Positions 9,331-58,960 of a stretch of 64,000 bases of DNA are shown piece by piece. A program made the position numbers and the translations under genes. Location: the NCBI RefSeq assembly GCF_006345805.1, contig NC_042999.1, forward strand, positions 62,992,001-63,056,000. Reading direction: 5' to 3'. This DNA comes from Octopus sinensis. Its lineage: Eukaryota. The notes under the pieces were generated by a model that had not been told where the DNA came from, searched no databases, and worked only from the letters and a program-made list of their open reading frames with translations. Within the stretch, counting starts at the first letter, position 1. Each line of letters opens with the position of its first letter.

Positions 9331-11239
9331 AATATATAATTGTAAATACCTTTTGAGAATACATATATGGTGAGTAAAAATTACTCCCCTAAAATCCAAA
9401 TTATTTTCCTTAACTAACAAATTGTTGCTCTTTTCTGCTTCAAACTAGTACTTATAATATTTTACATATACACACACACACTCATTATACATAAGTGTGT
9501 TTCACCACTTTACTGGTGGTACATAGCCTATTCAAATATAAGAGTGGATATCATTAAATATTACAACAACAGATGTGTGTTGGTTATATATGGTTAATAA
9601 TCCCTAAGTAGACATGAAAGTAGATACGGATGTACATAGAGCTCACTGCTACAAACAGTAGTTGGAATAATGTATTCCGTCAAGAAACCATGAAATACCT
9701 GCAGTGATTTGAACTTGCAGGCTTAAAGTAAGCAGTCCCAACTTTACTGTCTATCTGTCCTCTACAGAACAACTAATTGGAGTGTAAAAGTTCAACAGAA
9801 AAATCTCGCAATAAGAAACAGCCAATAGAATAAAATCGTTTTACTTGGCTAAGATGCTCAACTTCAAGAGCAAATGCATTTGTTTTGTTTTTTTTGTTTT
9901 TGTTTTTTTTTGCAAATTGCTTCCAACCAGAGTAAACCATGATGCACTGGAACAAGAAGTTGCAATGATGATTACATGGCATTTCTCAGTGCTTTGAAAA
10001 TCTAATCCAGGGATTCCAGTACCCATGAGGGCATAAGTGCAACCATCTTATTGTGGGTGCTGGAAGGAAGGAGGCAACAAGGAGGACATTGGAAGACAAG
10101 TTGAGGCAGATGAAAAGAATACAAATTAGTAGTTTAACCACAGGCTGACAGGGTCGCGGGACTGGCCAGTTTGGAGGGTAGTAGGGGTTCGCTCCCCCTG
10201 CTAGCAATGTATTGTACATAAAGGGTGCAGAGCTTGCACCGAAAAACCAGCTGGTGGAGAATCTGCCTGGGGTTAAACTAGTAGTAACATTCATTTGTCA
10301 CTTTGCTTTATTATATAGTATATGTTACTACTCTATCTCTTCTTGAGATTTTATAACTAGCTGTAGACATATTTATTTCAACCTTTGCAGGTAGTTGTAA
10401 TTAGTTTCAATTACTTGTTGCAACAGGAATTATAGTTTATATAATCTATATATTAATCCAATAGTACTTTCCTACCTACCTACCTTTTGTGTATTGCTAA
10501 GGGAAATAACTCAAAGTAAAATTCAAAAAGATGGTAATTATGGAAATGATGGTGGTGACGGCAACAATGGTAACAGTCATGTTAATAGAAAGACAGGGGG
10601 AGAGAGGGAAGAGAGAAGAGATGAGATGAGGTAAGCCTTCACATAAGATAGAGAAAATGTAAGAGAAAAAAGTAATACAGAAAAACTAGAGAAAAAACAA
10701 AAGAAAATAAGAGATGATGATGGTAAATAGTAGTAGCGGTAGTGATGATGCTTTTTGCTGTTTGTGATGGCTTGCTTGTTGTTGGTAGTCATAGGAATGG
10801 TGGTGACAATGTTGCTCAATGACAATTGCTTGCATTAAAGCACATGCATTTAATCACATTTTAAAAAAAATATATAACTTGTTGCAATCAACTCTTCACT
10901 ACTTACAATCACCATCTCCATTAACTAATGCACTCGCCATCATCACCACAGCAAGCCATTATAATTTCCAGTATATAAGTATGCTTATATGCCTGAAGTT
11001 TATTCCTCAGTGCTGCCTTTTTTCCTCCTATCTACAGTTCTCAGTTTTCACCAGTGGAATTTTCATGGAATTTTCACAGGTTTCATTAGTTTATAATAAT
11101 AATTGTGAAGAGACAGCTTTAATTGTTACTGCATTTATATGATAAAGGTTCTGGACCTGTACTATAACTCATTACATTTGCAATATGTCAGCCTTCAATG
11201 CTTAGAAAAAAATATTAATATATACTATATACAGGAATA

Positions 11240-11990
11240 TTTGAAATTTGATTTTCGTTTTTCGATCACTAATGAGACAATACTTATGTGTGTAACATGA
11301 AAAGACACAAGATGTTGCATTGAAGCTTTTGAAGATAAAAGATCACAATAAGAAGACACTAACACATACTGACATTGCAGAGAGGGAATGAAGGCCTATT
11401 ACAATATTTAAACACACCAAAAGAAAAGCAATGTCACATACAATTAGATAAGATATTATAAAAGAAACCATAGAAACTACTACAAAGAATAACTCTGATG
11501 TTATTCTTAAGGTTATTCTTTCAGTAGCAATACTTTATGACACATTGATGAAATGGCAAAAGATTTTGAAAGAACCTCAACAGTGTAAATTTTGTATCCA
11601 CTGGATAAACCAAAGTATGGAAGTTCTAATACTTTCATAGTCTATGTAATGTACTTTAGTCCTAGTAAATGAATTTTGCTTTGCTAAATATCTTAAGGCA
11701 CTCAAAAAGTCAAAATGAGGAAAATATAACCATATCATAGCATTTGCTTCTGATGGCACCCCAGCTCTGATGAGTAGGTAAAGTTTTTCATTTTTCCTAA
11801 AGAAAACAGTTTCTATTGTATGCAAATGTGAATCTTGTGAAAGAGAGAAAAAAAACCTGAGAACATCACAATGCTTTGAAACAAATATCACGTTTATAAA
11901 CATGATAAAAAAAAACTGACTTAGTTCAGACATTTTGTATTTGTTCTGATACCAATGACGTATCAATACTTTATACCTAATGGTATTAAC
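11240..11990 (+). pseudogene. Decayed hAT (Buster/Charlie-type) transposase
   Basis: Manual translation gives FSSNTL*HIDEMAKDFE (about 11519-11570) and HIIAFASDGTPALM (11731-11775), matching the LSNNTVxRRIDEM and catalytic DGAxxM motifs. Many stops and frameshifts. Confidence 0.65.
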
Positions 11991-14396: not shown

Positions 14397-14812
14397 CAGG
14401 ACTTTGCTAACAAAGCAGATATCTCTCTTACTTGTTTCAGTCATTTGACAGTGGCCACGCTGGAGCACCGCCTTTAGTCGAACAAATCAACCCCAGGACT
14501 TATTCTTCATAAGCCTAGTACTTATTCTATCGATCTCTTTGGCGAACTGCTAAGTTACAGGGATGTAAACACACCAGCATCAGTTGTCAAGCGATGTTGG
14601 GGGGACAAAACACAGACACACAAACATACACACACACATATATATATATTATACATATATATACATATATAAGATGGACTTCTTTCAGTTTCCATCCACC
14701 AAATCCACTCACAAGGCTTTGGTCAGCCCGAGGCTATAATAGAAGACACTTGCCCAAGGTGCCACGCAGTGGGACTGAACCCGGAACCATGTGGTTCGTA
14801 AGCAAGCTACTT

Positions 14813-16805
14813 TATTTTATATAATTTGCCACTAGAGCAGCACACAGAGTAGTAGCTACGGGCTGGACAAGGACATTAATGGATGATGGTGGTGGTGGAT
14901 GAAGATGGTGATGGGAGAAGTCGAAAGTGCCCGCCGACTTTCGCTTCTCTAAAACAATGTTTCAATAAATACATTTAATAAAATGTTCACAATGATTCAA
15001 ATTACATAAAAAATGTTCAACAATTCTCCTCGTCAGGTCCCCGAAAAATTGTCTTGCCGCCTGCAGACAACTCTGCGACGACAAGTCGGGGCCTGCAAAG
15101 AGAAAAGTAAAATCATTCCTTTCAAAGGTCTCTGCGACCCTTGACAAAGTATCTTCCGTTACTTTTTCCGCAGCTACCCGCGGAGGCCATAACGGACTCC
15201 TTGAGCCAACCGTGCCCTTACGTTCTCGGTCACCCAAGCCATTCAAAAATCTTTCCACCTCCTCTCCCTTGTGGTAAAGGAAGAGAAGCATCTCCTCTTC
15301 ACAGGAAGGGACCTCTCACTGCTCCGTCAGTGGCACACTTCCTACTGGCGGATCCTTGTCCGCGGGTGACATACATCCCACCGCGGCTCCGTCGGCGACA
15401 CAGAAACGTCAGTCGTCCGACCTCTCTTTTTTCTCCTCCTTCTTTTGGGGGAGACTGCTGACCCAGGGGACTCCGTCACCAGACACGGGGGATTGCTATC
15501 CCCCTCCACCCCCTGAGCGTTCTTTGGCGGGCAACCATTGTTGCTCGCCTGTCTCTTTCTTTTCGTGGAGGCAACCTCCTCCACGACTTCCTCCGTCTCC
15601 CCCTCCAATGAGGGGGCGGCGGGCGCCTTTTCCCTTTCTGCTCCGGGGCACCACCACGGCCCCCGGGACAATTCTTCCTGATATGTCCGGGCTTCAGGCA
15701 CAGGTGACACTTGGGGGGGGGCAGCCCTCGAGTATCACCGGGTACCTGTGCCCAGCCATTCTCAGGAAGTCCGGGAATTTCATTTCTCCCATGGCCACCG
15801 GTGTCCACAGGGTCAAAGTTGCCTTTGACCCCTCCCAGGCGACCGCGGGAGCCATTTTCACACTCAGTAGTCTGGGTCCGCTATCCCCCAGGCCTCGCCG
15901 GATGGTCTTCTCAATCCATTCCGCCTCCGTGCCCGGGGGCAGCCCACACACCCAGGCTCTTTTTACTTTTCTGCCACAATACGAGGGGAGGAACAAAATT
16001 TCCTCTCCCTCCAGTGGCTCGCTAGCAAATCTGCTAGCTTCCTCGGGGGTACCAAACAGCAACCACACCGTTGCAAATTTAGTCCCCCGATAAATAAATT
16101 TTATAGTTGGCAGGTGGTCCCCCAACTCTTTCTCTATAGTATTCCTGTCGAAGAGGGCAATGGCTCCACGCGACCTAGAATAGGTTCGTAGGACCACCGT
16201 CTTCTTCTCAAGACTTTCAATCCACTGCTTGGGTGGGGCGACCTCCCATTCCAAAGCGGTGGTTTCTTTTGTTGCCATGTTTTTTTTTTTTTTAAATAAA
16301 TGTATTCAGAATAAAACTAAAAAACGAGAAGAAAAGGAAATCCGAAGAAAGTCACAATGAAAAAAGGAGAGAGTCAAATAAAGTTAAAAAGAAAGTCAAA
16401 TAAAGTTAAAAAGAAAGTCAATAACACAGCAAAATCCTTTTGGCCATTTGGTACTCCCGGCCTAAATCAAACCAGGATCGCACAACTTCCACAAAAATTG
16501 GTGTAAAATTGGTAGTTCTTCACAGCACAATACAATTCTCACAATTACGTGAGAAAAATATTTACTCACTTTATCGAAGACGGATACGCCCCAAAAAATT
16601 TTCTCAGCGAGAAAAATATATTTGCCACATGTCGGCAGAATCAGAATTCTGAATCCAGTAGGACTTCCTGCATGTAAAAAATAATTCTCAACAAAAACTC
16701 CCACTGGACCCAGAAAACAGAATCTTACCTTACATGGGGCTTCCAAAGTTTTCAATTCAAGACGGCTTCAAAAGCACATCTTCACCGCTGACTCGCACAT
16801 GCGCA
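14813..16805 (-). mobile_element. ORF1-only non-autonomous non-LTR retroelement (HAL1/half-LINE-like, L1/Tx1-type ORF1)
   Basis: Perfect 15-bp TSD gtaagcaagctactt at 14798-14812 and 16806-16820; short A-rich 3' end; 527-bp 5' leader; one frameshifted ORF with a CCHC knuckle; no room for RT or endonuclease. Confidence 0.85.
14962..16278 (-). CDS. Frameshifted ORF1p/gag-like nucleic-acid-binding protein (RRM-like region, CX2CX4HX4C knuckle, acidic/basic C-terminal half)
   Basis: ORF 15694-16278 (MATKETT...FPDFLRMAGHRYPVILEGCPP) shifts at a G9 run (15713-15721) into KCHLCLKPGHIRKNC, then near a G/C run at about 15660 into EREKAPAAPSLEGETEEVVEEV...PKRRRRKKR, then probably into ORF 14962-15291. 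The LPxxLxIxGxxxxVxYEGxPxxCxxC layout is typical of L1/Tx1 ORF1p. Confidence 0.75.
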
Positions 16806-17891
16806 GTAAGCAAGCTACTTACCACACAGCCACTCCTACACCAACAGTAAAAAAAAAAAATCAGTGCTGTTTACATGTCTTCTATTATAGCCTCAGGCTA
16901 ATCAAAGCCTTGTGAGTGGATTTGGTAGATGGAAACTAAAAGAAGCCCGTCTTATATATGTATATATATAATATATATATATGCGTGTGTGTGTGTTTGT
17001 GTGTCTGTGTTTGTCCCCCCAACATCGTTTGACAACTGATGCTGGTGTGTAACTTATGGTGGCTGTTCTTTAGGTTCAGCTCAACTTTGGTCAAGCAGAC
17101 GTAGTCGAAAGTATCTTGTCAGTAACTACACAATCGTATTTTCAGGTAGTATAGCTACATTCTTCAATGAGTTTTTTCTTTTTTTTTTAAGCAACAGAAT
17201 AGACAGGAGGATATTAGTGTCTCAAGTCCTAGGATTCATAAGGCTGGTTACCTGATTTCCATGGAGTAAAAGTGACCAAAATCACAACATTACCCCTGAG
17301 CAGGACATCAGTCCAATGCAGAGTAACTCAATTATAGCGAACTGAAGTAACATGCAATGAAGTATATTGCTCAAGAACACAATGCTCTGCCCTGTCCATG
17401 AACAGAAACCACAATCTTGAGACCATGAGTGCAACCAGCTAACCACTAAGCCTTCACTGACAGGATGTAACTTGAGAAATATTTGGCTCTTGTCTCAAGC
17501 AACTTTTCTTTCATTGAATCATTTTCTATTTGGTGTTCTTGCTACATTATAAATTAAGACAAGAGCAAGTTAAAAATTCTGTGGACTGCCCACTACTTTG
17601 ATTCTATGTCAGTCTAATTACTTTCAGCAAAATACTTTTAGGACCAGCAGAGTGGATAGAATTTAGAGTGCGATTAACAAAAATGATTCTGTAATTGCTT
17701 GTAAGTTTTCCTGCCACCGGTAATAATTCTCATTTCTGCCAATATATTTTGCTGGACTAAGAAAAGGAGATTATATAGCAACAGACAGATCAGGTAAAAG
17801 GGGTAAAAAGATAATTTCTAATACTTTGCTCCATCAAAAATTCTGTTAAATCATTCTAATATATGATGACAGTTTTTCTTGTAGAAATTAA

Positions 17892-56150: not shown

Positions 56151-57619
56151 ATAATGATGATGATGATGATGATGATGATGCTTTGTAAAATAGACGCAAG
56201 GTACAAATTTTAAGTGAGAGTACAGTTGACCTTAGTACTTGATGGCTACTTTATTCACTGCCTAACAAGCTTTTCTAATTTTGGCAAAAGGCCAGCAGCT
56301 TCGAAGGAAGAAGGAAGTCAATTGTGCTGACCCAGCTGCTCAAGTGGTACTTATTTTATCAGGAAGAAAGACAAAGTCAACTTTGGCTGCATTAGAACTC
56401 AGAATGTAAAGAGCTGGAAGAAATGCTGCTAATCATTTTGTCTGGTGCAGTAATGACTCTGCCAGCACGACACCTTCTTCCTCCTCCTAATAATATATTA
56501 AACATAAAAAGCAAATAACAAAATACTTTATTAAAATATTTTTCTTTATTAAGAGTAATGAAATAATTAATTAAAAACCATACAAACAGTCACAGTTTTG
56601 TGATTACGCACACATAACATATACATATATTATTTCATGAACCACATTTATGAAATGCTAGAAGTTTGGTTCAATCTTTGCCAGAGCTATGCACTAAAAT
56701 ACTCATATATTTTATGGGCAGGGTTGGTGGTGTTTCTGATTATGTTTAACCATACTTCATTATCTCAGATTACGAGCTCTTAGCAATTAATAACAATTTT
56801 GTTGATTCTTGTCTTGAGAACTCAAGTAGTTTTTAGAAAAATATCTCAAAATTCCTATCGCTTCAAATTAGCTTTTGAAAAATCAGAGAAGAGATTTAGA
56901 CATTGGAATCCAGGGAATTTTAAATACTTCCTTCTCAAATAACAACAATGGCCTGGTTTTCATTAGGAGTAGAAGAAATAAATCTATATTAAAAAAAAAA
57001 AGGTAGGGTTGATTTCTTCCTGCCAACAGTGTTGATGCTGTTGTATGTATAGATATTTTGGAATGAAATGATTAAAAAGTAAGCATATCCTCTATAAACA
57101 GCAAAAAAACAAAACAAAATTGTATGAACAAATAATAATAATAATAATAATAATAATGTTTCTGATAAATGCACAAAGCCTGAAATTTAGGACTAGCAGG
57201 GGAGCATTATGATGCCATGTGTTGAGAGGAATTCTTTGGGCTTTGAATAATTCATCTTTGGAAATATGGGTGTTTCATTCAACATCCTTAAACAACCCTT
57301 ATTCAGGAACCTTTTGAGTGGGATGAACTACTCAACCTGAAGAAAATTCTAACTGGATTCCACCTGCAAGGTCATGTGCTGTCTATCTTGATATGAAATC
57401 ACCATGTCGTTCACATATGGATGTGATGCATGTGTCTAGTGTACTCTTATCAGACAGGTAATCATGATGGTATATAGGGCTTCATATATTTGTACCCTAG
57501 TGTCACTTTGATGGCAAGTGTCTCTCTTCAAGCATTTTAATCTTGCCCCCCATACTGATCTTTTTGCTAAAGTTATGAAATAAAGAAAAACTAGTTGAAG
57601 CAAAAATGTAGGGCAATCC

Positions 57620-58960
57620 TCATTATGGACTCAGTTGATAGTTTTATCTCTGTTATACAATACAACAGTTGCTTGAATACACTTCATAAGTCAGAAATGC
57701 TTGAATTGTGTGCAGAATGGTTTCATTGTCCAGCACATATCCCGGACAAGTTCAATTCTGCTGTATCTACTGAGTTCATCTAGAGCCAGCAATGCCCTTT
57801 GTTACCACTGTCCAAGCAAGAAGTTTTTTGATGTCCATAGTTCCTGGTATAATGGTCATCCACCAAAGACTGTTCAGCTGATTCTTGTCAATGCCCCTGA
57901 GTTTCATTACCACTGGTGTTGTGCACAAACACCACTGATATTACAGGATGCAGAGACTGATGTCCAAGTGGAACTTGTTTGACCAATGATAGCGGTTCTT
58001 TCAAAGAGACCACTTCTTGATATCGCTACAAATGCTGCAACATCAGCATATTATCAATCACTGCAAGCTGAGCTCTCCATCAGCTGTTAGCAAAATGGAC
58101 CATTTGGCCAGAGAAACATTTCTCAGCAAGTCTGGCCATCATGTTCAATAACCCCATCCCAGGTCCTCTCTGTTTAGAGGTATGGCTTGAACCAGAGAGC
58201 AAAGATCTCAGCAGAACTAGAGGTTCGTAATGCTGACTAACATGGACTTGCCTCTCCATGTGCTAAGATGCAAACTACTGACATGTGGTACTTAATGCAT
58301 GCACCTATCACCAACTTGCGTATTCCTTCAGTAGAATGCTGATCACCTCATTTTGAATGATGGTAACATCCTCTATGCAGCTGACATGGCTTTCCTTCAT
58401 CTTAGTTTGAGCAGAAAGCTTCTCAACATCTCTATCTTTTGCAACAAGGGTTCAAGAACTGGGGCAATGATAAGAGGGCATCCTTGCCAAACCAAGCATA
58501 TGATTCAAGCTTCCATAGGTAGAAATTCAGTCCCACTATGAAGCAAATGCCATTGTACAGTGGACTGTTGACTAGTAATTATAATCAGCTCTATCAAAAA
58601 TTTTGGAACAATCCCAATGGATTAGAGCTCCATTAAAGTGAGGTTTGTTACCAGCCCTCCTCACTATTTATCATGAGGTTAAGGTTGTAGATAAACCTGC
58701 TGGAAATGCAGGCATGTGCTTATATCTACATTCCCAACTACACTACCAGCACCTTGGCTAAGATTTTAAACTCTGCATTCAGCAGTTATGGGTCAGAAAT
58801 TGCAGATGATATCTCCTTTGTTTATGTTATGTCCTTCTTCAGCAGGGAAAGTCTCAAATCTGTGACCAGTTGTGATAAACATCTGTCAAGAGAGGACAAT
58901 TAGTGTGGCATGTCCATAAAGCACATACCATCCAAATCAAGCAATGTCTCTCACAAAACC
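57620..58960 (-). pseudogene. Decayed Tx1/L1-clade reverse transcriptase (ORF2) relic
   Basis: F*PIT/LNAEFKILAKVL, HWDCSKIFDRAD and VWQGCPL...LEPLL correspond to L1/Tx1 RT domains. Confidence 0.8.

What the first reader, a model, noticed from the sequence alone, without database searches (positions are those of the whole stretch)
14798..16820. Complete ORF1-only (half-LINE/HAL1-like) retroelement with perfect 15-bp TSD
Seen: a 1,993-bp insert with exact TSD gtaagcaagctactt, a short A-rich 3' end, a 527-bp leader and a single frameshifted coding region of about 440 codons with an RRM-like block and CHLCLKPGHIRKNC. No RT or endonuclease motif lies inside the TSDs. Established: L1/Tx1 ORF1p has this architecture, and ORF1-only HAL1 elements are known from a few animal lineages. 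Inference: this is a non-autonomous family that supplies its own RNA chaperone and borrows ORF2 in trans. I know of no description in cephalopods but cannot check.
Basis: partly seen in the sequence, partly recalled or inferred. Interest (0 to 1): 0.85.

Follow-up and report, generated by a model that had tools for sequence, protein, structure and literature searches.

The report
ORF1-only LINE derivative inside octopus SINE
A 2-kb retrotransposed element sits inside a common octopus short repeat; it encodes only the RNA-binding protein of an L1/Tx1-type jumping gene and no copying enzyme, so it belongs to a small, old lineage that must borrow that enzyme from related full-length elements.

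Summary
The insertion is real. The insert is 1,993 bp (window 14813-16805, reading on the minus strand) and is flanked by a perfect 15-bp duplication. Six uninterrupted copies of the host SINE-like repeat carry the 15-mer once, which serves as empty-site evidence.

The coding claim needs correcting. ORF1 is about 311 codons with two frameshifts, the first at a C9 run, not about 440 codons. The downstream 109-codon ORF is an orphan.

An AlphaFold model (pLDDT 81) and Foldseek show two tandem RRMs followed by a CCHC knuckle, which is the Type I ORF1p architecture. Distant homologues (E about 1e-15) in Octopus vulgaris, O. sinensis and a marine metagenome lie directly upstream of APE-RT-zf-RVT ORF2s, whose best PDB match is human L1 ORF2p.

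The insert itself has no ORF2 trace. Two further copies in O. sinensis, on different chromosomes, share the leader, the ORF1 and, in one case, the tail. Neither is followed by an ORF2. ORF1 evolved under purifying selection (dN/dS at most 0.12, synonymous sites saturated). This supports an old ORF1-only, trans-mobilised lineage that is analogous to HAL1 and HeT-A but is not a member of either.

New point: all three copies abut the same base of the SINE head. This is either target preference or a co-transcribed head, and I could not resolve which. Copy number and catalogue status could not be checked.

The parts
14813..16805 (-). The inserted element, 1,993 bp. Its 5' end is at 16805 and its 3' end (...TATAAAATA) at 14813.
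   Evidence: Bracketed by an exact 15-bp repeat. Single copy within the window. Collinear with L013 15741 onward and with L001 9490-10975.
16806..16820 (.). Target-site duplication, the copy on the element's 5' side (AAGTAGCTTGCTTAC in element orientation).
   Evidence: Uninterrupted repeat copies carry it once (A1; A6).
14798..14812 (.). Target-site duplication, the copy on the element's 3' side.
14676..14812 (-). Host SINE-like repeat, positions 20-156 of a 156-bp consensus, followed by a (TA)n/(TG)n tail further left.
   Evidence: blastn to the consensus: 95.6% over 137 bp.
16806..16839 (-). Host SINE-like repeat, positions 1-34 (the 'head'). A few more SINE bases extend to about 16848.
   Evidence: blastn: 100% over 34 bp. 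Junction alignment A6.
16279..16805 (-). 5' leader, 527 nt, with a run of about 14 A just before the ATG (T-run on the + strand from 16280).
   Evidence: 84.8% identical to the L013 leader and about 60-74% to the L001 leader.
16711..16767 (-). Most conserved block of the leader (element positions 39-95); candidate internal promoter or regulatory block.
   Evidence: 77% identical to L001 9545-9604, although synonymous sites in ORF1 are saturated. Visible in A6. The function is inferred.
15342..16278 (-). ORF1, about 311 codons, read through two -1 frame changes; the stop is at 15344-15342.
   Evidence: tblastn of P0001 gives three HSPs in frames +3, +2 and +1. Translations. 64% amino-acid identity to O. 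sinensis LOC115225585.
15733..16200 (-). Two tandem RRM-like domains, approximately residues 27-98 and 104-182.
   Evidence: AF2 model of P0001 with a 64-sequence alignment: pLDDT mostly above 90 in the core and two beta-alpha-beta-beta-alpha-beta modules. Foldseek top hits are tandem-RRM proteins, probability 1.0. Coordinates were transferred from P0001 numbering and are approximate.
15713..15721 (-). C9 homopolymer at the first frame change. This is either a mutational hot spot or an assembly error.
   Evidence: The tract is C7 and in frame in L001. It is shifted +1 at the same place in L013.
15668..15709 (-). CCHC zinc knuckle CHLCLKPGHIRKNC.
   Evidence: The family profile matches CCHC knuckles in the PDB. 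The column is conserved in A3.
15611..15646 (-). Region containing the second -1 frame change (short A/G runs).
   Evidence: Overlap of the frame +2 and frame +1 HSPs. Sequence.
14813..15341 (-). 3' tail, 529 nt, with no ORF2-derived sequence.
   Evidence: blastn, tblastx and tblastn against related LINE loci find nothing. Its first ~200 nt are homologous to the L013 tail (tblastn E 6e-7).
14962..15291 (-). Orphan 109-codon ORF inside the tail; probably not a conserved gene.
   Evidence: No Pfam hit. No homologue in the 5.8-billion-protein database. The homologous stretch in L013 has an in-frame stop.
14829..14835 (-). CTAGTGG, a 3'-terminal motif shared with full-length relatives (CT[AT]GTG[GC] 12-25 nt from the end).
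   Evidence: A5. It occurs once in the element, 23 nt from the end; chance is about 0.004. A role in RT recognition is inferred.

Best explanation
This is a retrotransposed copy of a non-autonomous, ORF1-only derivative of an octopod L1/Tx1-type LINE lineage.

The element consists of a ~530-nt leader, one gene for a Type I ORF1 protein (two RRMs plus a CCHC knuckle, an RNA-binding/chaperone protein), and a ~530-nt non-coding tail ending in a short A-rich terminus. It has no endonuclease or reverse transcriptase.

Shown:
- It inserted into a SINE-like repeat with a 15-bp target-site duplication.
- Its protein is homologous to the first ORFs of full-length APE-RT LINEs in Octopus.
- At least two further copies with the same 5' end and the same ORF1-then-tail organisation exist in O. 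sinensis.
- ORF1 was kept under purifying selection while the copies diverged.

Inferred:
- Its RNA is bound by its own ORF1p and is reverse-transcribed at a nicked target by ORF2p supplied in trans by a related autonomous L1/Tx1-like LINE. Recognition would probably be through the shared 3'-terminal CT(T/A)GTGG...A-rich motif.
- All three copies abut the same base of the SINE head. The lineage therefore probably prefers that site, as Tx1-clade elements prefer specific repeats. Alternatively it carries the SINE head as co-transcribed 5' sequence.

The window copy is young: the TSD is perfect and the host SINE is 96-100% identical to its consensus. Its ORF1 is interrupted only by two homopolymer-type frameshifts, which could even be assembly errors.
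For: - Insertion and TSD.
- Empty-site evidence from six paralogous SINE copies.
- Reading path and closest homologue: P0001, 64% identity, 281 aa.
- Fold: AF2 pLDDT 81 with two RRM-topology modules. Foldseek hits are tandem-RRM proteins, probability 1.0. The CCHC knuckle appears.
- LINE context of homologues found by exhaustive HMMER (66 hits, best 1e-15; the named ones are all octopods):
  - L010: ORF1 plus an intact 1132-aa ORF2 with Exo_endo_phos, RVT_1 and zf-RVT. Its best PDB match is human L1 ORF2p at 2e-71, against R2 at 1e-24.
  - L002: ORF1 plus ORF2.
  - L011: ORF1-like gene followed 11 bp later by an APE-RT ORF.
  - L003: the start of an ORF2 follows ORF1.
- No ORF2 in the insert.
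- Further copies:
  - L001: leader, ORF1 and about 130 bp beyond.
  - L013: collinear through leader, ORF1 and tail. Tail homology is E 6e-7, with no ORF2 downstream.
- Selection: pS 0.72 (saturated), dN 0.275, dN/dS at most 0.12.
- Shared 3' motif.
- Same SINE-head junction in all three copies.
- Non-orthology: the flanks are unrelated. The host SINE and TSD are almost undiverged, while the copies differ by 30-40%.
- Literature: Tx1-clade target preference for other TEs and microsatellites (PMC4494074). ORF1-only LINE derivatives: HAL1 (PMC5753468) and Drosophila telomeric families (bioRxiv 10.1101/2025.06.09.658640).
Against: - Only three copies could be reached, and the source genome could not be searched.
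- Only the window copy has a defined 3' end and a TSD.
- L001 breaks off about 130 bp after ORF1. The 3' terminus of L013 cannot be located with significance (232 of 500 shuffles score as well).
- L001 and L013 have the SINE head 5' of the element, but no SINE remainder and no TSD 3' of it. Simple site-specific insertion does not predict this.
- No autonomous element with the same leader, ORF1 or tail was found. The nearest ORF2-bearing relatives share only about 20-27% ORF1 identity and no detectable leader or tail similarity beyond a 7-nt motif.
- All three ORF1s carry defects: the window has 2 frameshifts, L013 has 2 stops plus a frameshift, and P0001 has Phe in place of the first knuckle Cys.
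- RNA folding of the 3' ends is not better than shuffled sequence.
- Trans-mobilisation is an inference.
Confidence: 0.7

Rival explanations
1. The SINE head is not the target but part of the element's transcript, through co-transcription or 5' transduction from a master copy lying in a SINE. This is how snRNA-derived heads of SINEU arose from Tx1 targets. The window's seamless SINE and 15-bp 'TSD' would then reflect first-strand nicking inside a resident SINE, with the 5' junction resolved by homology between the head-bearing cDNA and that SINE.
For: All three copies carry the SINE from its 5' end to position 34 directly upstream of the element. Two of the three have no SINE remainder downstream and no detectable TSD. 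There is precedent for target-derived heads and co-transcription in Tx1 and R2 elements (PMC4494074).
Against: In the window, both flanks rebuild one complete SINE in exact register, with a perfect 15-bp duplication. If the site were not targeted, that would require the nick to fall by chance within the first 34 nt of a same-orientation SINE, which I estimate at roughly 1%. The head alone lacks the B-box-like part of the repeat, and the leader contains T4-T5 runs, so Pol III transcription from the head is unlikely (inference). No TSD flanking head plus element was found in L013 either.
Confidence: 0.25
2. ORF1-only copies are sporadic internal-deletion products of an unsampled autonomous LINE with the same leader, ORF1 and tail, arising either during reverse transcription or after insertion. 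On this view there is no self-propagating ORF1-only lineage.
For: The source genome could not be searched. Full-length L1/Tx1-like LINEs with this ORF1 type are present and nearly intact in Octopus. The family is poorly sampled in protein databases.
Against: The window and L013 copies differ by 15-31% in DNA, yet both go from ORF1 directly into a homologous tail. The ORF2-less organisation therefore predates their divergence. ORF1 stayed under purifying selection over that time. No ORF2 remnant is detectable in the tail.
Confidence: 0.12
3. It is a processed pseudogene (retrocopy) of a cellular RRM-CCHC gene, or a domesticated ORF1-derived host gene, rather than a transposable element.
For: O. 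sinensis annotates the closest relative as a protein-coding gene, LOC115225585. The insert has retrocopy hallmarks (TSD, no introns).
Against: Homologues sit immediately upstream of APE-RT ORF2s in four loci. The three copies share a conserved 5' leader and the same junction with a SINE. All three have damaging mutations. There is no poly(A) tail, and no intron-containing parent was seen. LOC115225585 lies inside another gene's span.
Confidence: 0.03

Closest known systems
HAL1 ('half-L1') of mammals
   Same: A non-autonomous LINE derivative that keeps the 5' region and ORF1, lacks ORF2, and is presumed to be mobilised in trans by the ORF2p of related LINEs (PMC5753468, citing Smit 1999 and Bao & Jurka 2010).
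   Different: HAL1 derives from mammalian L1, whose typical ORF1p is Type II (coiled coil-RRM-CTD, Pfam Transposase_22; PMC4120745, PMC5203782). This protein has two RRMs plus a CCHC knuckle (Type I) and gives no Transposase_22 hit. The host is an octopod, there is no long poly(A) tail, and the element is associated with one site in a SINE-like repeat.
HeT-A and other ORF1-only telomeric LINEs of Drosophila (Jockey clade)
   Same: ORF1-only elements with a gag-like CCHC-containing ORF1 that depend on the ORF2 of related elements. ORF2 loss recurs specifically in target-specialised lineages (bioRxiv 10.1101/2025.06.09.658640). Here, too, the ORF1-only state goes together with an apparent target association.
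   Different: Different clade: the relatives' ORF2 is L1-like with zf-RVT. Insertions are interspersed, not telomeric head-to-tail arrays. No host function is suggested.
Tx1-clade (L1 superfamily) target-preferring LINEs: Tx1L, Keno, Kibi, Koshi, Tx1-Mar
   Same: Type I-like ORF1 (RRM/CCHC combinations are reported for Tx1; PMC5203782). ORF2 carries APE plus RT. They insert preferentially into other transposons, small-RNA genes or microsatellites (PMC4494074). Here relatives are flanked by (ATT)n (L002) or (TA)n (L012), and this lineage abuts one position of a SINE-like repeat.
   Different: Those are autonomous elements, and this one has no ORF2. Placement of the octopus relatives in the Tx1 clade by RT phylogeny was not done. 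In the papers I read, I did not find a SINE head listed among Tx1 targets.
Octopus L1-Tx1 families in published repeat annotations
   Same: L1-Tx1 LINEs are reported as part of the coleoid repeat complement (PMC8967140). They are also reported as 13 recently active families with 421 insertions in O. vulgaris (PMC13282606). The full-length relatives found here (L010, L002) presumably belong to them.
   Different: Those papers, as far as I read them, do not mention ORF1, ORF1-only derivatives or SINE-head insertion sites. Their libraries could not be searched here.

Membership tests
TPRT-type retrotransposon insertion | Target-site duplication flanking the insert, with an intact 'empty' version of the site | tested here: met
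   Exact 15-bp repeat. Six paralogous SINE copies carry the 15-mer once, continuous with both flanks. The evidence is paralogous, not an allelic or orthologous empty site.
TPRT-type retrotransposon insertion | A-rich or poly(A) 3' terminus abutting the TSD, with the coding strand in the same orientation | tested here: met
   The element ends ...AAATTATATAAAATA, followed by the AA of the TSD. There is no long poly(A).
Type I ORF1p (Khazina & Weichenrieder classification) | [quoted passage not shown] | tested here: met
   The AF2 model shows two RRM-topology modules ending about 5 residues before CX2CX4HX4C. Foldseek hits are tandem-RRM proteins. The knuckle is seen. The model is of the O. sinensis homologue (64% identical), not of the window protein itself.
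Type I ORF1p (Khazina & Weichenrieder classification) | Encoded as the first ORF of a non-LTR retrotransposon, upstream of an EN/RT ORF2 | tested here: inconclusive
   Met for the homologues in L010, L002, L011 and L003. Not met for this element or its two close copies, which have no ORF2.
HAL1 (half-L1) | Keeps ORF1 and lacks ORF2 | tested here: met
HAL1 (half-L1) | Derived from mammalian L1, whose typical ORF1p is Type II (Transposase_22: coiled coil, RRM, CTD) | tested here: not met
   No Transposase_22 hit. The architecture is two RRMs plus CCHC. All named relatives are octopod.
HAL1 (half-L1) | Multi-copy family with shared termini and copy-specific TSDs | tested here: inconclusive
   Three copies share the 5' end. 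Only one has a defined 3' end and a TSD. The source genome was not searchable.
L1/Tx1-type LINE superfamily | ORF2 with an N-terminal APE endonuclease, RT and a C-terminal zinc-binding domain | tested here: inconclusive
   Met by the relatives: L010 ORF2 has Exo_endo_phos, RVT_1 and zf-RVT, and its best PDB match is L1 ORF2p. The element itself has no ORF2. Its link to the superfamily is ORF1 homology at E about 1e-15 and a 7-nt 3' motif.
L1/Tx1-type LINE superfamily | RT phylogeny places the element in the Tx1 clade | not tested
   No reference RT set or RTclass tool was available. L1 against R2 was discriminated only by PDB E-values.
Target-specific LINE | Independent insertions at the same nucleotide position of the same target sequence, with both target halves flanking each copy | tested here: inconclusive
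   The 5' junction is identical in all 3 copies. The 3' target half is present only in the window copy.
Processed pseudogene of a host gene | Intron-containing parent gene and a poly(A) tail | tested here: not met
   There is no poly(A). Homologues are LINE ORF1s. No parent gene appeared among the hits.

The most novel reading that the evidence does not exclude
An ancient, self-perpetuating ORF1-only branch of Tx1-type LINEs in octopods that homes to one nucleotide position in the head of the genome's most abundant SINE-like repeat. It would depend on a related autonomous element's ORF2p, making it a parasite of a LINE that nests in a SINE. It would parallel the repeated ORF2 loss seen only in target-specialised (telomeric) LINEs of Drosophila. 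If the head is co-transcribed, it would also be a possible route by which new head-bearing retroposons arise.
Probability: 0.35. Interest if true: 0.62.

Novelty: new member of a known kind. Interest (0 to 1): 0.48.

Why it matters
ORF1-only LINE derivatives are documented in mammals (HAL1) and Drosophila telomeres (HeT-A and its relatives). An independent case in a Tx1-type lineage of a mollusc would show that loss of ORF2 with retention of a selected ORF1 recurs across LINE clades. It would suggest that this goes together with target specialisation.

It would also give a natural system for asking what ORF1p contributes in cis when ORF2p comes in trans.

For octopus genomics, LINE and SINE activity has been linked to genome expansion and brain expression. 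Here the finding flags an uncatalogued class of LINE-derived units that annotation pipelines call as 'uncharacterized protein' genes (LOC115225585, part of XP_029639579.1). It also points to a possible specific LINE-SINE interaction.

Tried and rejected
- **Structure prediction with a two-sequence alignment:** unusable (pLDDT 33). It was repeated with 64 sequences.
- **Indexed profile search with the 19-sequence alignment:** swamped by low-complexity words; only 2 proteins returned.
- **Exact-product look-ups:** the look-up of the window's 194-aa ORF found nothing on record. The look-up of P0037 also found nothing.
- **The 109-aa tail ORF:** no Pfam hit, no homologue in 5.8 billion proteins, and no similarity to ORF2 or the 3' UTR of related LINEs. 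I rejected it as an ORF2 remnant.
- **PDB sequence search with the family profile:** only CCHC knuckles matched, with no L1 ORF1p match.
- **Orthology of the window and O. sinensis copies:** rejected. The flanks are unrelated, and the host SINE and TSD are nearly undiverged while the copies are 30-40% diverged.
- **Programmed -1 frameshifting at the poly-C tract:** rejected. L013 is shifted +1 at the same tract and L001 is in frame.
- **TSD search around L013, with or without the SINE head:** nothing of 7 nt or more exact, or 11 nt or more with one mismatch.
- **Proposed 3' terminus of L013 beyond the (TG)n tract:** not significant.
- **3'-end RNA hairpins:** z-scores between -1.4 and +0.4, so not evidence.
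- **tRNA origin of the host repeat:** not detected by Rfam or ARAGORN, so I do not claim it.
- **Metagenome scan for a 28-nt leader block:** 0 hits.
- **Bao & Jurka 2010 (PMC2923044):** not held in the library.


Full report

The 15-mer GTAAGCAAGCTACTT lies at 14798-14812 and 16806-16820 and brackets exactly 1,993 bp. It occurs 8 times in the window (0 expected). The reason is not chance: the site lies inside an abundant ~156-bp SINE-like repeat, which gives 24 hits in the 64 kb.

This is useful. Six other copies of the repeat carry the 15-mer once, flanked on one side by ...ATGTGGTTG and on the other by ACCACACAGCC... (alignment A1). In the finding, the left flank plus one 15-mer plus the right flank rebuild one complete repeat in exact register. 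The left part covers repeat positions 20-156 at 95.6% identity and the right part covers positions 1-34 at 100%. The duplication is therefore a true target-site duplication, with paralogous empty-site evidence.

The insert is single-copy in the window and reads on the minus strand. Its 5' end is at 16805. A 527-nt leader precedes the ATG at 16278. The 3' end is ...GGCAAATTATATAAAATA at 14813, directly followed by the AA that starts the repeat. There is no long poly(A).

**2. The coding region**

The closest protein in 5.8 billion is Octopus sinensis LOC115225585 (P0001: 281 aa, 64% identity, full coverage). Using tblastn of P0001 on the element, the reading path has three segments:
- element 528-1087 in one frame;
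- 1088 to about 1177 in the -1 frame, which contains the knuckle CHLCLKPGHIRKNC;
- from about 1174 in the next -1 frame, with an acidic/basic tail homologous to the P0001 C-terminus, ending at the stop at window 15344-15342.

That gives about 311 codons, two frameshifts and no internal stops. The first shift is in a C9 run (window 15713-15721). The same tract is C7 and in frame in P0001's gene, and it is shifted in the opposite direction in a third copy. It is therefore an indel hot spot or an assembly error, not a programmed frameshift.

It also has no homologue in the protein database.

**3. What the protein is**

Pfam sees only a weak zf-CCHC (E 0.007). An exhaustive HMMER search with a two-sequence profile found 66 relatives (best E about 1e-15). 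Every named one is from an octopod: O. bimaculoides, O. vulgaris, O. sinensis or Argonauta hians.

Their alignment shows three conserved blocks:
- an RNP1-like block, RGKxYGTVxVxF;
- a second module beginning RVxxIPP;
- VEGRxPxCxxCGxxGHxxxxC.

With 64 sequences, AlphaFold gives a confident model of P0001: mean pLDDT 81, with the core mostly above 90. It has two consecutive beta-alpha-beta-beta-alpha-beta modules (residues 27-98 and 104-182) immediately before the knuckle. Foldseek against the PDB returns tandem-RRM proteins (SFPQ/NONO/PSPC1 and hnRNP A1 UP1) with probability 1.0 over about 170-240 columns. TM-scores are low, as expected when the relative orientation of the two domains differs.

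This is the architecture that defines Type I ORF1p: at least one RRM immediately upstream of a CCHC knuckle (PMC4120745, PMC5203782).

**4. Genomic context of the relatives**

Four loci show an ORF2 next to the ORF1 homologue.
- **L010 (O. vulgaris).** The ORF1 homologue P0003 is part of a head-to-tail array of full-length LINEs with a period of 5,273 bp and 99% identity. An assembly gap cuts the array. The first unit has an intact 1,132-aa ORF2 with Exo_endo_phos, RVT_1 and zf-RVT domains. Its best solved-structure match is human L1 ORF2p at E 2e-71, against 1e-24 for R2.
- **L002 (O. sinensis).** P0004 is followed by a homologous ORF2, and the whole LINE is flanked on both sides by (ATT)n.
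- **L011 (marine metagenome contig).** An 861-aa relative is followed 11 bp later by an APE-RT ORF and is preceded by the zf-RVT end of another ORF2.
- **L003.** The contig ends in an ORF2 start that is 73% identical to that of L010.

The family is therefore the first ORF of L1/Tx1-type LINEs. L1-Tx1 LINEs are already catalogued in octopus repeat annotations (PMC8967140). One annotation lists 13 recently active families in O. vulgaris (PMC13282606). Tx1-clade elements are known for target preference towards other transposons, snRNA genes and microsatellites (PMC4494074).

**5. No ORF2 in the finding, and two more ORF1-only copies**

tblastn with the L011 and L010 ORF2s finds nothing in the insert. 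The only trace in the whole window is a weak fragment at 57.6-58.6 kb. The 3' 620 nt has no similarity to the ORF2 or 3' UTR of the related LINEs.

Two close copies exist in O. sinensis on different chromosomes.
- **L001 (P0001's gene).** It shares the leader (element 18-476, about 60-74% identity), ORF1 (68-70%) and about 130 bp beyond the stop. It then breaks off at a CA-rich tract.
- **L013.** It was found because a gene model (P0011, XP_029639579.1) fused the first 45 ORF1 codons to an integrase-like exon. It is collinear with the window element: leader 84.8% identical, ORF1 about 69%, and a homologous tail (tblastn of the tail ORF E 6e-7 over 67 residues, with a stop in L013). No ORF2 lies downstream on that strand in the following ~29 kb. 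Its ORF1 is decayed, with 2 stops and a frameshift. Its exact 3' end could not be established.

Two copies that differ by 15-31% in DNA both run from ORF1 straight into the same tail. The ORF2-less organisation is therefore ancestral to them and is not a one-off deletion.

Between the window copy and P0001, synonymous sites are saturated (pS 0.72) while dN is 0.275. That gives dN/dS of at most 0.12 over 275 codons, so ORF1 was functional during the divergence. This is what one expects of a replicating ORF1-only lineage.

Other sub-families may have done the same:
- L012 (O. vulgaris, P0010) is a ~2.1-kb ORF1 unit between two (TA)n tracts with no ORF2.
- The 1.7-kb contigs L004-L007 carry an intact 294-aa ORF1 with no ORF2 start in the 566 nt that follow.

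**6. How it most likely moves**

The element shares a short terminal motif with the full-length relatives, CT(T/A)GTG(G/C), lying 12-25 nt before an A-rich end (A5). The motif occurs once in the element, 23 nt from its end, with a chance of about 0.004. The most economical mechanism has two parts:
- ORF1p made from the element's own RNA coats that RNA.
- ORF2p from a related autonomous L1/Tx1-like LINE recognises the 3' end, nicks the target and reverse-transcribes the RNA. That produces the 15-bp TSD.

Only the insertion signature and the homologies are shown. Trans-complementation and 3'-end recognition are inferred, and RNA folding of the 3' ends is unremarkable.

**7. The SINE-head junction**

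All three copies are preceded by the SINE-like repeat, from its own 5' end up to ...GTGTGGTAAG(T/A)AG(C/T)TTGCTT(A/C)C. They then switch to TG(C/T)GCATG...; L013 has two extra bases at the switch. Uninterrupted repeats instead continue CAACCACATGG (A6).

The copies are not orthologous. Their flanks are unrelated. The window's host SINE and TSD are almost undiverged, while the elements differ by 30-40%.

Two readings remain.
- **(i) Target preference.** The lineage, meaning its ORF2 donor, prefers this site, as Tx1-clade elements prefer specific repeats. The window copy fits this perfectly.
- **(ii) Head in the transcript.** The head travels with the RNA, as with the target-derived heads discussed for Tx1 and SINEU in PMC4494074. 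This reading is favoured by the absence of the SINE remainder and of any TSD 3' of L001 and L013.

The two can also be combined: a targeted element co-transcribed with its target, with occasional off-target copies. I could not resolve this with three copies. I lean to (i) or the combination, at roughly 0.5-0.6, because chance nicking inside the first 34 nt of a same-orientation SINE should be rare. My estimate of about 1% uses the 11.6% SINE content reported in PMC13282606.

The repeat is not recognised as a tRNA by Rfam or ARAGORN, so I do not call it tRNA-derived.

**8. Comparison and novelty**

Functionally the element works like HAL1 (an ORF1-only L1 derivative, PMC5753468). It works even more like HeT-A and the many ORF1-only telomeric LINEs of Drosophila. 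There, ORF2 loss recurs in target-specialised lineages (bioRxiv 10.1101/2025.06.09.658640).

It is a member of neither family:
- its ORF1p is Type I, whereas mammalian L1, the source of HAL1, typically has Type II;
- its relatives' ORF2 is L1-like, not Jockey-like;
- its host is an octopod.

My full-text searches did not turn up a description of ORF1-only LINE derivatives, or of SINE-head insertion, in cephalopods. Repbase and Dfam could not be queried. I rate it a new member of a known kind, of moderate interest to transposon specialists.

**9. Caveats**

- Three copies is a small sample.
- The structural model is of the 64%-identical homologue.
- Global-alignment identities are somewhat inflated by gap placement.
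- The segment identities are mosaic: the leader groups the window with L013, while the ORF1 core groups L013 with L001. This hints at recombination between lineages and complicates dating.

Noticed in passing
window 57615-58634 (minus strand): A weak, degenerate fragment similar to the C-terminal half of the L1/Tx1-like ORF2 of L010 (tblastn E 4e-4). It is the only ORF2-like trace in the window.
   Followed up: no
window 16849-16948: About 36 bp beyond the host SINE's 5' end lie an A12 run and then a partial SINE (positions 84-156) in the opposite orientation. The insertion therefore sits within an inverted pair of SINE pieces.
   Followed up: no
whole window: The SINE-like repeat gives 24 blastn hits in 64 kb. 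Most copies end in (TA)n/(TG)n microsatellite. Neither Rfam nor ARAGORN recognises it as a tRNA.
   Followed up: partly
L010 4438-19184 (O. vulgaris OX597840.1): A head-to-tail array of at least 2.8 full-length L1/Tx1-like LINEs with a 5,273-bp period and 99% identity. The units are joined by 10 bp (cactgataag), unit 1 has an intact 1,132-aa ORF2, and an assembly gap cuts the array. It may be a real tandem array or an assembly artefact.
   Followed up: partly
L002 9722-9778 and 15345-15375 (O. sinensis CM016872.1): A full-length ORF1+ORF2 LINE of the same superfamily is flanked on both sides by (ATT)n, which suggests microsatellite-targeted insertion.
   Followed up: partly
L012 about 9640-11720 (O. 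vulgaris OX597833.1); L004-L007: There are other apparently ORF1-only units of 1.7-2.1 kb from different sub-families. L012 lies between two (TA)n tracts. L004-L007 are identical contigs assembled from several sequencing runs, each with an intact 294-aa ORF1.
   Followed up: partly
window 15713-15721; L013 about 16990; L001 10555-10563: The poly-C tract just before the zinc knuckle is C9 with a -1 shift in the window, has a +1 shift in L013, and is C7 and in frame in L001. It is an indel hot spot or a recurrent long-read homopolymer error.
   Followed up: partly
window 16279-16805 and ORF1, compared with L013 and L001: The relationships are mosaic. The leader is 85% identical between the window and L013 but 74% to L001. 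The ORF1 core is 79% identical between L013 and L001 but 70% to the window. This suggests module exchange between lineages.
   Followed up: partly
window about 16280-16293; L010 4672-4693 and 9945-9971: A long A-run (about 14-27 nt) lies just upstream of the ORF1 start, both in the ORF1-only element and in the full-length O. vulgaris LINE.
   Followed up: no
L013 10001-36638 (O. sinensis XP_029639579.1) and L001 (LOC115225585): Public gene models treat pieces of this element as host genes. One fuses the leader and the first 45 ORF1 codons to an integrase-like (rve) exon about 20 kb away. The other calls ORF1 an 'uncharacterized protein' inside another gene's span.
   Followed up: partly
window 15356-16093 (plus strand): A 245-codon ORF lies antisense to ORF1 in the GC-rich part. 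It has no Pfam hit and is probably a by-product of composition.
   Followed up: partly
L013 15746-15753 against SINE positions about 60-67: The first bases after the SINE head in L013 (CCACTGCG) match an 8-mer further inside the SINE. This may be chance or a trace of an internally deleted SINE at the element's 5' end.
   Followed up: no
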